The notes under the pieces: generated by a model
The model's input: only the letters and a program-made list of their open reading frames with translations
The model's database searches: none
What the model was told of the DNA's origin: nothing
Shown here: positions 2,880 through 14,266 of the stretch, one piece after another
How positions within the stretch are numbered: position 1 is the first letter of the stretch
Layout: the number at the start of each line of letters is the position of its first letter
Position numbers and translations under genes: made by a program
DNA from: Octopus bimaculoides
Taxonomy: Eukaryota
Assembly (NCBI RefSeq): GCF_001194135.2
Contig: NC_068985.1
Coordinates: 125,869,845 to 125,933,844, forward strand
Reading direction: 5' to 3'
DNA length: 64,000 bases

Positions 2880-2999
2880 CTGGCGTGTACATCGACTACC
2901 CCACAGGCAACCTCGACACAACCCGGTGGTACAATGCCACCAAGTGCTAACCATGCTTGGTATTCAGCTGTTTTAATATCGCCTGTCTGGCGCTTCGAT
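2880..2999 (-). CDS. Cassette exon A: (R)SKR-QTGDIKTAEYQAWLALGGIVPPGCVEVACGVVDVHA, mature-peptide exon
   Basis: Acceptor ttttacctgtttacag|ATCGAAGCGC, donor GCCAG|gtacagtaaa; 120 nt, phase 2-2, open frame. Shares 18 identical residues over a 39-column hand alignment with exon B. Lies inside supplied ORF 2705..3076. Confidence 0.9.
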
Positions 3000-3899
3000 C
3001 TGTAAACAGGTAAAACAACACACAAATGGACATCAACAATAATGACAGAACAATTTGACACGTCGATAAGAAACAAACGTTATAAATACGAGAAGGAATG
3101 TGAAGGAAAAGTGCACATATCAACGAAAAAGGTAATGACAACAAAATAAAATCAATATTGCTTTTTGTAATAACATAACAATTATAATGTGACCAGCTAT
3201 ATGAAATGTGGGGTGTCATTGGATAAAGATAACTATAGAAGAGGCAATGGAGTTTTACTGGAATTGGAGGTGGTTGGTAAGGTAACACGATATTCCTTTA
3301 ACAAATGGTCAAAATATTTACTTAAATATTAATATATACATGCGCATATGTGTGTATGTGTGCGTAAAAGGGTCAAATATATACTTATACATTAATGTAT
3401 ATGTGTGTGTGCATATACTATTCATATGCATTAAATGATCTATGGAAATTGAACTCCGAGTCTGCTGTAATGTATATAGCCGTGTTAACTACAACACAAG
3501 AGTGATAACTTATTTAGCTACCTAAATCAGAAGTTTAACCAAGCCATATTAGCGGTTTATGAAGTGTGAACTTAGCCCACACAGTATGAAGGTAGAGTAC
3601 TATATATATATATATATATATATGTATATATATATATATATATGCGTGCGTGTGTATGTGTGTGGTGTGTGTGCGCGCGCAATATTTATGAATGAAATGG
3701 TACAAAAATTTGAACTGTAAAAATTGAATCTATCATTGCTACGTTGTTAATTATTGGTATAACACAAAACCCGAAAAAAATAGTAACATTGACCATTTAC
3801 TTAAGGATTTGAGGTGGGGAAGTCAGAAAGGGCTTTGGTTTAGGTCTTGACTAGGTAAAAGGATGGTGTATTTGGGGGTTGAACTAGAGCTTACTATAC

Positions 3900-4013
3900 C
3901 TCTTTTCAATATCAACTAACCCACACGCCACCTGGGTGCAGGTAATTTTTCTGGACAATGCCATCAGTGCCCGATACTCAGCCGCTCGCATATCAGCTAG
4001 CTGTCGTTTAGAT
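3900..4013 (-). CDS. Cassette exon B: (R)SKR-QLADMRAAEYRALMALSRKITCTQVACGLVDIEK, mature-peptide exon
   Basis: Acceptor cccctgcttacag|ATCTAAACGA, donor AAGAG|gtatagtaag; 114 nt, phase 2-2, open frame. Furin motif, N-terminal Gln, two Cys in C-x4-C; clear paralog of exon 2880-2999. Lies inside supplied ORF 3884..4066. Confidence 0.9.
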
Positions 4014-7000
4014 CTGTAAGCAGGGGTTGTAGAAATGCATGCATTACATAAGATGTTCTGTTGCATATTCTCTTGATATCATACATAGCATGAACACTTT
4101 TCAAAAATGTAATCCATACACCGAAATATATTTTTATGCCACAGCAAAACTGAATCCATTACTTTTCATATAACTTAAAGTGAAATTTTTATAGTTGCTA
4201 AACCTGGACCACTGCATAAATTAGCTTAACAGTCTGTGAGTTAAGTAGCATTTTCTACTTAGCAAATGGATACCATTTACTTAATTCATCAGCCCTGTTC
4301 TCCGTGCTAGTCAGTTAAGCAGACGCTGACGAGGGTGAGAGAGCTTGAAGCTCGTCTTGTTTCCTTGTCCGTGTTTGTTGATCGTTTGGTTGTATACACT
4401 CAAGGCTTATTCTGCACCTGATCCCAACATAATTTCAGCAAAACACATGACTGGAACTCTTAAAAGTATTTTAAAACGTTTTAACTATAATTACCCTTCG
4501 TGATACCAACTTCTTTCAAAATATGTTCAAATTTATACAAATCATGTGTGCTATAAATAGAGCAATTTGACTGAACACACTCTTTATTTTTTGTTTTGTC
4601 ACATACCCAGTTAGTTTTTCATTTGTCGTTAAAATCCGTATTGATCCATACATACTAACGATTTTTTTCTTTTTCTCTCGATACCTGAAATAGTTTTCGC
4701 TATTTAATTTCCAATAATAAGCTCTGATTCTTTCATTAACTAGCATTTCAAATTATTACATCTATATGTATGCATTCAAAGTATCTTAAAGTCGATAAGT
4801 TTCATTTCTGAGTTCTCTTAAGTTCAAATCTCATTGAGATCTACTTTGATTTTGTTCCTGATAAAATAAGTACATGTCAAACATTGCAGTAGATTAAATC
4901 AACACTGATACCATAAACCGTATGGCTTTAAGTTACAGTTGTTGGCAATTAGCCATTTACTGCCTCCCTAGTACTTAAGTTTACAACGCAGGCAAAACTC
5001 CATATAAATTTATGTTCGATTAGAAACTCGTATTTTACCTATACGATATGCATTGTATATGAGGCTTAAACATTTATTTTATCCCTCGGTTTGTAAACAT
5101 ACGTACATTCGCACATACATACATACATACATACACGCACATGTGTATATGTACATAAGTTTATATATCTGTATATATGTATGTATGTCTAGTAAGTTTG
5201 CTTTCTAATCACACTTCTCCTGTGTCTCAGGTACATTCAATCCTTTCGAAATTCCATAAACAGAAACTGTGTAGAAGCCGTCGGATGAACTGTATTTTTA
5301 AGGAGTGAACTTAATCCAACGACCGACTTGATTGGTTTTTCACTTTGTTGTATGCATTCGGCTTGCATTCACTAATGTCTAACAAAAAGGGCATGAACAT
5401 TGCTATTTCTCTTACGTAGACGTAACAAAATGTGAGCGGCTGATACGATACAATTATATGTATAATGTAAAAAAGTGAATTATTACAGGTATCTTTAAAG
5501 GGCTAATGATTTTGTTCACGGCCCGTATAAATAATGAGCTTCCCAGAGTGCCTACCAACAGAATAGCTTGCAAAAGTCAGTTAAACAAGCAGTAGTAGGT
5601 CGATCTGTAAGGAAAATACCTGTTTCACTTACGCTTACTCGACTTCGTGGGACGAGAGAGAGAAAGAGAAAGAGAGAGAGGAAGGGAGAGAGAGACGATG
5701 GGAAGACAGTGGCTTTCCCTCTACCGTACGTAATATTCCTAAATCTATGATCTATTTTGAGTTGCCTGGAACCTTTACTGAAAACGAGCACATGATAGTA
5801 TATGGTAGTCCATAGTCAAATGTATCCTTCATTGTACATGAAGATTCGGAGTCATACTTTTTAACACTGTTAAGCGAATTTGACCTGACCGGGTGCTCTG
5901 TCAGACTTGAAACTCATGATCGAGAGCCTACTTGCCTGATTTACAAAACCAAGTGTAATCAAATAAAATCAGTGGTATTGCAGTCCAAATACTCAATAGA
6001 AGGATGGTATTCGAACTGAACAAACAGACGATAAATGTGTGTGGGGGGGAGGCGCTTTGTAATTCCAATTCTACATATATACAATTATTAGTACTTTCTT
6101 CGTTTTTGAGAATTATTCTCCTTTAAGCTTTCCTGTAATTTCCGTTATGCAACACACAGTAAAAGCAGCATGTGTTTTAATGCCAGCGCAGAGATAATGC
6201 ATGGAAACCGTGAGGTGTCGGCATTCTCAGCCAATTGTAACATATACTATAGCCGACTTATACGTCATCTTCCTATGTGATAAATCAAGTGAGTTATTAA
6301 ATGTACGCAATTTCTGCTGGACTATGAATTAGCAGCTGTAATATTTAATCAATAAACAGTTATTTCTATTCCTAAGCATCGCAACATTCTTCAAGAGTCT
6401 AAGCACGGAGAATGTAAATTCATCTTCAGGTTATATTTTTTATTTAATATATTTAAATACCCCACTTATTACTCTAACAATGTTTGGCTAATTAAAACCA
6501 TAAAGATCTCAAAAAATTGCATCACTATGATCGATTTTGTCTGGATTGTATGAACTAGGATAAGCTCCAGATTTGATGCAGTGGCATTTATACTTTTAGT
6601 CATTCATAGCTGCATCGTATCATTGTAAGTAAATTTGAGTTTCCTGTTGTTTCTGTATCCTTTTATTGTTACTTAATTATGTTTATCAGCTAATTAAGTA
6701 CCATTGGAAAATATCAATACACAAGTGACAAAGAAAGTAAAATCTTCTTTCCAAATACAAAATCTTAATTTATATATATATATATATATATATATATATA
6801 TATATAAATTAAGATTTTGTATTTNNNNNNNNNNNNNNNNNNNNNNNNNNNNNNNNNNNNNNNNNNNNNNNNNNNNNNNNNNNNNNNNNNNNNNNNNNNN
6901 NNNNNNNNNNNNNNNNNNNNNNNNNNNNNNNNNNNNNNNNNNNNNNNNNNNNNNNNNNNNNNNNNNNNNNNNNNNNNNNNNNNNNNNNNNNNNNNNNNNN

Positions 7001-13743: not shown

Positions 13744-13866
13744 TATTATTATTATTATTATTATTATTATTATTATTATTATTATTATTATTATTATTAT
13801 TATTATTATTGTTATTATTATTATTATTATTATTATTATTATTATTATTATTATTATTATTATTAT
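13744..13866. repeat. (TAT)n array at the LINE 5' junction
   Basis: Direct reading. Confidence 0.97.
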
Positions 13867-14177
13867 CTTGTACTAGTTTTGTTCATATTATATTTTACGA
13901 ATCTTGGAAACAAGTGGCGCTTAGCGTTTAATAATTATTAACTGCTAAACACCACTTGATTCCTCGAATCCGAATTTTCTCTCTATATTGTGCATAAGAG
14001 ATGTGATTAATTACAACAAGCTATCGCATTAATTAAAACAAAGTTAAATGTATCATGTGTCGGAATTTTAAAATGATCTACACGTTTCTATATAACAAAC
14101 AACTTGCAATGATTTTTATGAAAGCAATTTCTTAGTTATGACGTTATTAGAAATATTGCAATGTAAAAACTACTTAC

Positions 14178-14266
14178 CTCAATTCTTCCTCTGGGATATA
14201 TCGTGCATTTACAAGAGAAACTAGCACCATGCCAACAATGCTAAGTATTAAAATGTGTCGTGTCAT
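14178..14266 (-). CDS. First coding exon (signal peptide plus short acidic pro-region) of a neuropeptide precursor
   Basis: Minus strand reads atttgatttcag|ATGACACGACAC...GAAGAATTGAG|gtaagt: acceptor immediately before ATG, consensus GTAAGT donor, 89 nt = 29 codons + 2. Translation MTRHILILSIVGMVLVSLVNARYIPEEEL has a basic n-region, hydrophobic core and V-N-A cleavage motif. The phase-2 end (AG) joins the first A of both downstream cassettes to give R-S-K-R. Confidence 0.88.

What the first reader, a model, noticed from the sequence alone, without database searches (positions are those of the whole stretch)
2880..14266. Split neuropeptide precursor with two duplicated, frame-symmetric mature-peptide cassette exons: one gene, two hormones
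Seen: a signal-peptide exon ending in phase 2 and two phase 2-2 exons (114 and 120 nt) 900 bp apart. Each begins by completing R-S-K-R and encodes a different peptide on one scaffold, Q-x-x-D-x-x-x-AEY-x-A-x-x-AL-x(5-7)-C-x-x-VAC-G-x-VD. Established: RxKR is a furin/PC site, N-terminal Gln cyclises to pyroglutamate, and C-x4-C forms a small disulfide ring. Inference: alternative (possibly mutually exclusive) splicing lets one locus choose between two ligands, conceptually like calcitonin/CGRP. This is the best candidate in the window for an undescribed signalling system; the ORF track shows only disconnected read-through fragments.
Basis: partly seen in the sequence, partly recalled or inferred. 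Interest (0 to 1): 0.9.

Follow-up and report, generated by a model that had tools for sequence, protein, structure and literature searches.

The report
Octopus QSamide/PXXXamide (iPTH-type) neuropeptide gene
The exons are real and belong to one gene that swaps peptide-coding exons, but the gene, its peptide family (QSamide/PXXXamide, the invertebrate parathyroid-hormone-like peptides) and this species' three alternative transcripts were already published in 2020.

Summary
On the minus strand there is a signal-peptide exon (14266-14178, 89 nt) and two paralogous phase 2-2 exons: cassette A (4013-3900, 114 nt) and cassette B (2999-2880, 120 nt). The window is 100% identical to the Octopus bimaculoides chromosome record CM046605.1, gene LOC106873782.

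The window cuts the gene. A third cassette C (99 nt, no cysteines) and a last exon F (106 nt, starting (S)GKKKR) lie beyond window position 1.

The assembly gap at 6825-7194 sits inside the 10.2-kb intron 1 and touches no exon. Gap-free orthologous loci show one signal exon and no hidden cassette.

Annotated models join the signal exon to A or B, with or without C. However, this is not an undescribed system. A and B are QSamide-type peptides and C is the PXXXamide / insect-PTH-like type. Differential splicing of such cassettes is described in the oyster. Table S1 of Xie et al. 2020 already lists O. bimaculoides transcripts 1-3, which are signal+A+F, signal+B+F and signal+C+F.

One point I did not find stated in the papers read: exon F supplies the Gly-Lys-Lys-Lys-Arg amidation signal, so only the cassette spliced directly to F should be amidated.

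Novelty: already known. Interest is low.

The parts
14178..14266 (-). Signal-peptide exon e1 (89 nt). The ATG directly follows an acceptor (tttcag|ATG), so at least one non-coding 5' exon must lie upstream; I did not find it. Ends in phase 2 (..TTG AG|gtaagt).
   Evidence: The hydrophobic core is residues 4-19 with V-N-A before the likely cleavage point. It is identical in O. sinensis and 50% identical in Argonauta at the same position.
4014..14177 (-). Intron 1 (10,164 nt). It contains the assembly gap 6825-7194 and reverse-transcriptase fragments.
   Evidence: No cassette or signal exon is found in the gap-free orthologous introns.
3900..4013 (-). Cassette A (114 nt, phase 2-2), QSamide-type: (R)SKR | pQLADMRAAEYRALMALSRKITCTQVACGLVDIEK. 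It has a weak donor, ag|gtatag. It is present in Octopus species but not detected at the Argonauta hians locus.
   Evidence: HMM E=1.8e-15. 111/114 nt are identical to O. sinensis. It is used in O. sinensis RefSeq models XP_029636461 and XP_036355813.
3000..3899 (-). Intron between cassettes A and B (900 nt), rich in microsatellites.
   Evidence: It is too long for steric exclusion of the two exons, and its ends are GT-AG.
2880..2999 (-). Cassette B (120 nt, phase 2-2), QSamide-type: (R)SKR | pQTGDIKTAEYQAWLALGGIVPPGCVEVACGVVDVHA. It has a weak donor, ag|gtacag. It is conserved in Argonauta and in a Sepia-like transcript.
   Evidence: HMM E=3.7e-19. pN/pS is 0.18 against Argonauta. It is used in XP_014776777.
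1..2879 (-). Start of the intron between cassettes B and C, with two assembly gaps (2278-2654 and 966-1721). Cassette C (L001 28468-28566) and terminal exon F (L001 40066-40171) lie about 4.2 kb and 15.8 kb beyond window position 1.

Best explanation
The finding covers the 5' two-thirds of the O. bimaculoides QSamide/PXXXamide (invertebrate PTH-like, iPTH-type) neuropeptide precursor gene, LOC106873782.

Gene layout (shown): one signal exon, three internal phase 2-2 cassettes, and a shared last exon F. Cassettes A and B are QSamide-type with a C-x4-C loop. Cassette C is PXXXamide/iPTH-type without cysteines.

Modular design (shown from the sequence): each cassette starts with its own x-K-R cleavage site. 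The single base that completes the split codon sets the residue before it, giving AG|A = Arg before A and B, and AG|C or AG|T = Ser before C and F. Any order-preserving combination therefore stays in frame and remains cleavable.

Isoforms (shown as database models and as literature lists, not as reads): e1-A-F, e1-B-F, e1-C-F, e1-A-C-F, e1-B-C-F and e1-F.

Processing (inferred from established prohormone chemistry): a furin or prohormone convertase cuts after RSKR, the N-terminal Gln cyclises, and the two cysteines form a six-residue ring. Exon F begins (S)-G-K-K-K-R, so the Gly is an amide donor only for the cassette spliced directly onto F. This would give ...VDIEKS-NH2, ...VDVHAS-NH2 or ...IDVDAI-NH2. 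A cassette followed by C ends ...SV and is not amidated. Splicing would therefore select both which peptide is made and which one is amidated.

Receptor (inferred from orthology): class-B GPCRs of the PTH-receptor / Cluster B group. This is demonstrated only for the PXXXamide-type peptide in Tribolium, not for QSamide-type peptides and not in any mollusc.
For: - Exon anatomy and frames.
- Identity of the window with GCA_001194135.2 and location of exons C and F.
- Same five exons, with the same lengths (89/114/120/99/106) and the same splice sites, in O. sinensis, its paralogous copy and O. vulgaris. Argonauta has four exons (e1, B, C, F).
- Only the exons are conserved between Octopus and Argonauta.
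- Exon versus intron conservation and pN/pS.
- Isoform models.
- Family assignment. The library-wide profile search finds 59 relatives, including Urechis 'QSGamide' QUP52026 (E=1.9e-12). One relative, P0036 (E=8.5e-8), matches with small differences the Platynereis dumerilii precursor printed in Table S1. A profile free of cephalopod sequences hits A, B and C.
- Literature. Thiel 2021 (PMC8557429) equates QSGamide, PXXXamide and iPTH. Realis-Doyelle 2021 (PMC8398477) reports differential splicing of one oyster gene into QSamide or PXXXamide transcripts, and reports that all but one of the mature peptides were detected by mass spectrometry. Xie 2020 (PMC7224569) shows iPTH activating Tribolium iPTHR1 and iPTHR2 and reports that the amidation signal is strictly conserved. 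Its Table S1 lists O. bimaculoides transcripts 1-3.
Against: - No RNA-seq reads were examined here. The O. bimaculoides transcripts in Table S1 are not marked 'transcript found', unlike some oyster entries, so they may be conceptual.
- No evidence-based O. bimaculoides model in the searched database includes cassette A. Inclusion of A is seen only in O. sinensis and O. vulgaris models.
- Amidation, pyroglutamate, the disulfide and the receptor pairing are inferred, not observed, for octopus.
- The AlphaFold model is uninformative (pLDDT 43).
Confidence: 0.9

Rival explanations
1. A and B are included together constitutively, or as a major isoform. The gene would then be an ordinary multi-copy precursor releasing A, B and C from one polyprotein, with no real ligand choice.
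For: Full inclusion stays in frame and gives a 175-aa precursor with KRSKR between A and B. One O. vulgaris model, CAI9723493, contains A+B+C.
Against: That model lacks the signal exon, starts at an intronic ATG and has an aberrant tail, so it looks unreliable. No RefSeq model, the Sepia-like transcript or any Table S1 entry combines two QS-type cassettes. The cassette donors are weak (GTATAG, GTACAG), which is typical of regulated exons. In A+B transcripts neither QS peptide would carry the amide that the family conserves.
Confidence: 0.1
2. A and B are separate tandem genes, each with its own signal exon hidden in an assembly gap.
For: The window has gaps at 6825-7194, 2278-2654 and 966-1721. 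The region around the first gap does not align to O. sinensis.
Against: Four gap-free loci each show exactly one signal exon and no extra exon between e1, A, B, C and F. The A-B intron in the window (900 nt) has no gap. Both cassettes end in phase 2 with donor sites and need exon F for a stop codon.
Confidence: 0.02
3. Cassette A is a decaying duplicate of B (a pseudo-exon) that is never spliced in. The gene would then make only B- and C-type peptides.
For: A is not detected in Argonauta, and the Sepia entries in Table S1 show only a B-type and a C-type transcript. The O. bimaculoides RefSeq model skips A.
Against: A keeps an open frame, both splice sites, the cleavage site, both cysteines and its exact length in four Octopus loci. 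It is 97% identical between species against 88.6% for introns. It is included in both O. sinensis RefSeq models.
Confidence: 0.05
4. The gene is a cephalopod CRF/DH44/ELH-type precursor, as suggested by the UniProt name 'Corticotropin-releasing factor domain-containing protein' for the e1+F isoform.
For: The UniProt automatic name for A0A0L8GZR7. From my own inspection, there is a loose resemblance between the amphipathic helix of exon F and CRF-like peptides.
Against: Pfam gives no CRF hit even at E<=10 for five family proteins. The exon-F peptide is not amidated (it ends KTE-stop) and is the shared tail of QSamide/PXXXamide precursors in many phyla. De Oliveira 2019 found no ELH/DH44 in cephalopods.
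Confidence: 0.03

Closest known systems
Octopus bimaculoides 'PTH' transcripts 1-3 in Table S1 of Xie et al. 2020 (PLoS Genet 16:e1008772, PMC7224569)
   Same: It is the same gene. Transcript 1 is the signal exon + cassette A + exon F. Transcript 2 is the signal exon + cassette B + F. Transcript 3 is the signal exon + cassette C + F.
   Different: The table gives only one-cassette forms and does not mark them as 'transcript found'. RefSeq models add two-cassette forms, A+C and B+C. The table prints protein sequences only, without exon coordinates or phases.
Crassostrea gigas QSamide3/PXXXamide gene (Realis-Doyelle et al. 2021, PMC8398477)
   Same: One gene whose differential splicing yields transcripts that encode either a Cys-containing QSamide peptide or a PXXXamide peptide, sharing the signal and C-terminal parts. 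The paper reports mass-spectrometric detection of all mature peptides but one, and its figures mark pyroglutamate and amide modifications.
   Different: The oyster gene has one QS cassette and several PXXX cassettes, plus two extra QSamide-only genes. Octopus has two QS cassettes and one PXXX cassette.
Sepia officinalis PXXXamide precursor (Zatylny-Gaudin et al. 2016, as cited; 'gene 1 transcripts 1 and 2' in Xie Table S1)
   Same: Cephalopod orthologue with the same signal peptide style, a B-type cassette, a C-type cassette and an F tail. The Logan transcript P0007/L004 is almost identical to transcript 2.
   Different: No A-type cassette is listed for Sepia. The C peptide keeps the Pro of PXXXamide (NPEEI-amide), whereas octopus has VDAI.
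Tribolium castaneum iPTH and its receptors iPTHR1/iPTHR2 (Xie et al. 2020)
   Same: Orthologous precursor family. It shares the conserved N-terminal S-D-(Q)-R-L-A-E-L core, a C-terminal G-basic amidation signal and a C-terminal extension.
   Different: The table gives a single PXXXamide-type transcript for most insects; the termite Zootermopsis is listed with a second transcript that has a different, Cys-containing peptide region. Receptor activation is shown only for this peptide type.
Annelid QSamide/QSGamide (Platynereis dumerilii, per Conzelmann 2013 as cited; Urechis unicinctus QUP52026)
   Same: Q-x-[AG]-D...C-x4-C-G-[LV]-[IV]-D...S-G-K-K-K-R layout, as in A and B when they are joined to F.
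   Different: The Platynereis and Urechis entries seen here show only the QS-type peptide. Sequence identity is low outside the motif.
   Same: One gene yields two different hormones through alternative RNA processing (established knowledge).
   Different: CALCA uses alternative 3' terminal exons with their own polyadenylation sites. Here the cassettes are internal frame-symmetric exons that share a common last exon. There is no sequence relationship.

Membership tests
QSamide / PXXXamide / iPTH precursor family | Significant sequence-profile similarity to established members | tested here: met
   The profile search of 1.84 billion proteins found 59 relatives, including Urechis QSGamide (E=1.9e-12) and P0036 (E=8.5e-8), which matches the Platynereis precursor printed in Table S1. 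A QS profile built without cephalopod sequences hits window cassette B at 3.7e-19 and A at 1.8e-15. A PXXX profile hits cassette C at 5.9e-15.
QSamide / PXXXamide / iPTH precursor family | Signal peptide, then a dibasic site, then a peptide with the conserved N-terminal core x-[SAG]-D-x-[RK]-x-A-E | tested here: met
   MTRHILILSIVGMVLVSLVNA | RYIPEEEL-RSKR-QLADMRAAEY / QTGDIKTAEY. No SignalP was available; the call rests on a hydrophobicity profile and the -3/-1 rule.
QSamide-type peptide (subtype) | Two cysteines as C-x4-C followed by G-[LV]-[IV]-D | tested here: met
   CTQVACGLVD in A and CVEVACGVVD in B. The same pattern occurs in the roughly 35 non-cephalopod modules extracted.
QSamide / PXXXamide / iPTH precursor family | [quoted passage not shown] Xie 2020 reports this as 'strictly conserved'. 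| tested here: met
   It is met only through splicing to exon F, (S)GKKKR, which lies outside the window at L001 40066. It is not met for a cassette followed by C. The amidation itself was not observed.
QSamide / PXXXamide / iPTH precursor family | QS-type and PXXX-type peptides encoded by alternatively spliced exons of one gene that share signal and tail exons | tested here: inconclusive
   Gene structure and database or literature isoforms agree, and isoform pairs exist in other molluscs (P0010/P0039, P0014/P0061). No reads were inspected here.
QSamide / PXXXamide / iPTH precursor family | The ligand activates a PTHR-type (Cluster B) class-B GPCR | not testable with these tools
   This is shown for Tribolium iPTH only. 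Thiel 2021 states the pairing is unproven in Lophotrochozoa.
CRF / DH44 / ELH | Match to the CRF domain profile (Pfam PF00473) | tested here: not met
   No Pfam hit at E<=10 for the window protein, P0003, P0001, P0008, P0006 or P0007.
CRF / DH44 / ELH | A C-terminally amidated peptide of about 36-44 residues | tested here: not met
   The exon-F peptide SDISSDDIRRSILAQKLIQFAAERLAKTE has 29 residues and ends at the stop codon without Gly.
Calcitonin/CGRP-type alternative processing | Alternative 3' terminal exons with separate polyadenylation sites | tested here: not met
   A, B and C are internal exons with donor sites, and all isoforms end in the same exon F.

The most novel reading that the evidence does not exclude
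The Octopus-lineage extra cassette A, not detected in Argonauta and not listed for Sepia, has acquired a receptor preference different from B and C among the expanded molluscan Cluster-B/PTHR-type GPCRs. Splice-dependent amidation, in which only the cassette adjoining exon F is amidated, acts as a switch that decides which ligand is active. Splicing would then route one gene to different receptors and tissues.
Probability: 0.2. Interest if true: 0.45.

Novelty: already known. Interest (0 to 1): 0.15.

Why it matters
This matters mainly for annotation. NCBI still labels the gene 'uncharacterized protein LOC106873782', and UniProt names one isoform a CRF-domain protein. Neither name reflects the published QSamide/PXXXamide/iPTH assignment.

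Biologically, the locus is a clean example of a modular neuropeptide gene in which frame-symmetric exons each carry their own cleavage site and borrow a shared amidation signal. The receptor for the QSamide-type peptides is still unproven in any lophotrochozoan, so octopus peptides A, B and C would be useful ligands for deorphanising molluscan PTHR-type receptors. It does not open a new signalling system.

Tried and rejected
- Pfam scans of the window protein and five homologues gave nothing.
- Literature searches for locus names and peptide strings in main texts found nothing. The sequences turned up only in a supplementary table.
- I first followed the UniProt 'CRF domain' name toward ELH/DH44. 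I rejected that lead after the profile search and the Pfam result.
- A cephalopod venom preprint that mentions DH44 proved irrelevant to this gene.
- A search for the 5' UTR exon using the Sepia-like transcript's UTR found no homology.
- A search for conserved intronic elements between Octopus and Argonauta, such as possible docking or selector sequences for exclusive splicing, found only repeats plus about 10-25 nt next to the exons. No mechanism for strict mutual exclusion is therefore supported. The 900-nt A-B intron, the GT-AG ends and the 3n exon lengths also rule out the steric, U2/U12 and frame-shift/NMD mechanisms.
- The AlphaFold model of the precursor had pLDDT 43 and was not used.
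- The DNA for the O. vulgaris copy-1 model (P0005) could not be fetched because the gene range is over 100 kb.
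Full report
**1. Observation**

- Signal exon e1: 14266-14178, 89 nt, ending ..TTG AG|gtaagt.
- Cassette A: 4013-3900, 114 nt.
- Cassette B: 2999-2880, 120 nt.

All three exons end in phase 2, and A and B also start in phase 2. These are QLADMRAAEYRALMALSRKITCTQVACGLVDIEK (A) and QTGDIKTAEYQAWLALGGIVPPGCVEVACGVVDVHA (B).

The two cassettes are 49% identical, and a tblastn of the window finds no third copy. 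The N-terminal exon has a hydrophobic core at residues 4-19 and V-N-A before the likely cleavage point. SignalP was not available.

**2. Where the window comes from and what it misses**

A protein search returned eight cephalopod proteins. One of them, XP_014776777.1 ('uncharacterized protein LOC106873782', O. bimaculoides), is exactly e1+B followed by two further segments. Its locus L001 (GCA_001194135.2, CM046605.1) is 100% identical to the window, and window position 1 corresponds to L001 24266.

The gene has five coding exons:

| Exon | Length (nt) | Location |
|---|---|---|
| e1 | 89 | window 14266-14178 |
| A | 114 | window 4013-3900 |
| B | 120 | window 2999-2880 |
| C | 99 | L001 28468-28566 |
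| F | 106 | L001 40066-40171 |

Cassette C encodes (S)VKR-TSSDQRIAELKALLAMSRVVGHGQIDVDAI. Exon F encodes GKKKR-SDISSDDIRRSILAQKLIQFAAERLAKTE followed by the stop codon. Both C and F lie beyond the start of the window. C is also phase 2-2 and is a cysteine-free paralogue of A and B.

**3. The assembly gap**

The N run 6825-7194 lies inside the 10,164-nt intron 1. It is 6,984 nt from the e1 donor and 2,812 nt from the A acceptor, and it sits between (TA)n and (TG)n microsatellites. No exon and no reading frame crosses it, because continuity of frame is provided by splicing.

Gap-free loci are available for O. sinensis (L002, and a second copy L006), O. vulgaris (L005) and Argonauta hians (L003). 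Each carries one signal exon and the same cassettes. Family HMMs find nothing else in any intron. This rejects the 'separate tandem genes' reading.

One caveat remains. The roughly 3 kb around the gap does not align to O. sinensis, so the gap's own content is not known.

**4. Are the exons real?**

- Exon lengths (89/114/120/99/106) and all splice sites are identical across four Octopus loci. Argonauta has e1, B, C and F with the same lengths.
- Between Argonauta and Octopus only the exons, plus about 10-25 flanking bases, are alignable. Everything else that matches is repeat sequence.
- Cassette B has pN/pS of 0.18 against Argonauta.
- Exons A+B are 231/234 identical between O. bimaculoides and O. 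sinensis with no indels. The introns are 88.6% identical with 139 gap columns (p=2.8e-8).

**5. What the gene is**

A profile of the cephalopod proteins was searched against 1.84 billion representative proteins. It found 59 relatives with the same layout in gastropods, bivalves, annelids and others. One is deposited as 'QSGamide [Urechis unicinctus]'. Another, P0036, matches with small differences the Platynereis dumerilii precursor printed in Table S1 of Xie 2020.

A profile built only from non-cephalopod QS-type modules hits window cassette B at 3.7e-19 and A at 1.8e-15. A PXXX-type profile hits cassette C at 5.9e-15.

The literature links these names:

- Thiel et al. 2021 state that QSGamide, the Sepia 'PXXXamide' and insect PTH-like peptide (iPTH) are the same proneuropeptide family. 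They also state that the pairing with PTH-type class-B receptors is assumed but unproven in Lophotrochozoa.
- Xie et al. 2020 deorphanised the Tribolium receptors with iPTH and report that the G-basic amidation signal is strictly conserved.
- Realis-Doyelle et al. 2021 describe an oyster gene whose differential splicing yields either a QSamide or a PXXXamide transcript, and report that all but one of the mature peptides were detected by mass spectrometry.
- Table S1 of Xie et al. 2020 prints 'Octopus bimaculoides transcript 1, 2, 3'. These are e1+A+F, e1+B+F and e1+C+F.

The gene, its family and its cassette alternatives are therefore already published.

**6. How it most likely works**

Shown from the sequence: every downstream exon brings its own cleavage site. 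The first base of that exon completes the split codon, giving AG|A = Arg before A and B, and AG|C or AG|T = Ser before C and F in Octopus. Every order-preserving combination is therefore in frame and cleavable.

Shown as models: e1-B-C-F, e1-A-C-F, e1-A-F, e1-B-F and e1-F occur among RefSeq, UniProt and Logan entries. One-cassette forms appear in Table S1. The same kind of isoform pairs occur in other molluscs; for example P0010 (Haliotis) pairs with P0039, and P0014 (Elysia chlorotica) with P0061, each pair sharing its signal peptide. The system is therefore combinatorial rather than strictly one-of-two. However, no credible model joins A to B.

Inferred: convertase cleavage after RSKR, pyroglutamate formation and a Cys-x4-Cys disulfide. 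Because exon F starts (S)GKKKR, only the cassette spliced directly to F should be amidated, giving ...EKS-NH2, ...HAS-NH2 or ...DAI-NH2. A cassette followed by C ends ...SV without an amide. This would account for the 'S-amide' end that I take to underlie the family name. It means splicing chooses the amidated ligand. I did not find this point stated in the papers read.

The cassette donors (GTATAG, GTACAG, and AT|GTAGGT for C) are weak, which fits regulated exons. No basis for enforced mutual exclusion was found. The A-B intron is 900 nt, all introns are GT-AG, all cassettes are multiples of three, and no conserved intronic pairing elements were detected.

**7. Rivals**

- Constitutive A+B inclusion rests on one dubious O. 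vulgaris model. That model lacks the signal exon and starts at an intronic ATG (window 4653).
- The pseudo-exon reading of A is contradicted by its conservation and by its use in both O. sinensis RefSeq models.
- The CRF/ELH/DH44 reading comes from a UniProt automatic name. It fails the Pfam test and the amidation and length criteria.

**8. Verdict**

This is a known neuropeptide family, however, and the specific isoforms for this species are in print. What remains open is transcript-level and peptide-level confirmation in octopus, the receptor for the QS-type peptides, and the role of the extra cassette A.

Noticed in passing
window 13021-13734 (-) and 10363-10710 (-); the wider block 13813-10902: There are reverse-transcriptase fragments inside intron 1 (RVT_1 E=1.2e-10 for the first, and a weak sub-threshold RVT_1 hit for the second). 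The roughly 2.9-kb block around the first one has no counterpart in the O. sinensis orthologous intron, so it looks like a lineage-specific retroelement insertion.
   Followed up: partly
L005 (O. vulgaris OX597818.1) and L006 (O. sinensis VCDQ01001841.1): O. vulgaris and O. sinensis carry a second complete copy of the gene with the same five exons. Its B and C cassettes differ from copy 1 almost only by non-synonymous changes (B: 6-7 non-synonymous against 0 synonymous; C: about 12 against 1-3). This suggests relaxed or positive selection on the duplicate's peptides. Whether O. bimaculoides has this copy was not checked.
   Followed up: partly
L003 (Argonauta hians BAAFZT010000040.1) 10001-31678: Cassette A is not detected in this gap-free locus; only e1, B, C and F are present. 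Sepia is also listed with only a B-type and a C-type transcript. A is therefore probably a duplication of B within the Octopus lineage.
   Followed up: partly
window 4609-4653 (-): A short ORF, ATG-MYGSIRILTTNEKLT, is followed by a GTATGT donor about 600 nt upstream of cassette A. It is conserved in O. sinensis and O. vulgaris and is used as the first exon by the O. vulgaris model CAI9723493, which lacks a signal peptide. It is probably an annotation artefact or a cryptic exon.
   Followed up: partly
UniProt A0A0L8GZR7 (P0008), the e1+F isoform of the window gene: It is auto-named 'Corticotropin-releasing factor domain-containing protein', although Pfam CRF does not match. De Oliveira et al. 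2019 report that ELH/DH44 is absent from cephalopods. The name could mislead anyone looking for the 'missing' cephalopod CRF-type peptide.
   Followed up: yes
window 14267-14276 (-), immediately upstream of the ATG: The start codon directly follows a good acceptor (ttgatttcag|ATG), and this is conserved in all Octopus loci and in Argonauta. The gene must therefore have at least one non-coding 5' exon further upstream. It could not be located by homology to the Sepia-like transcript's 523-nt 5' UTR.
   Followed up: partly
whole window: There are 27 N runs totalling 7,780 nt, nearly all flanked by (TA)n, (CA)n or (TATG)n microsatellites. Most long 'ORFs' in the mechanical ORF list are artefacts of these gaps and repeats.
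   Followed up: no
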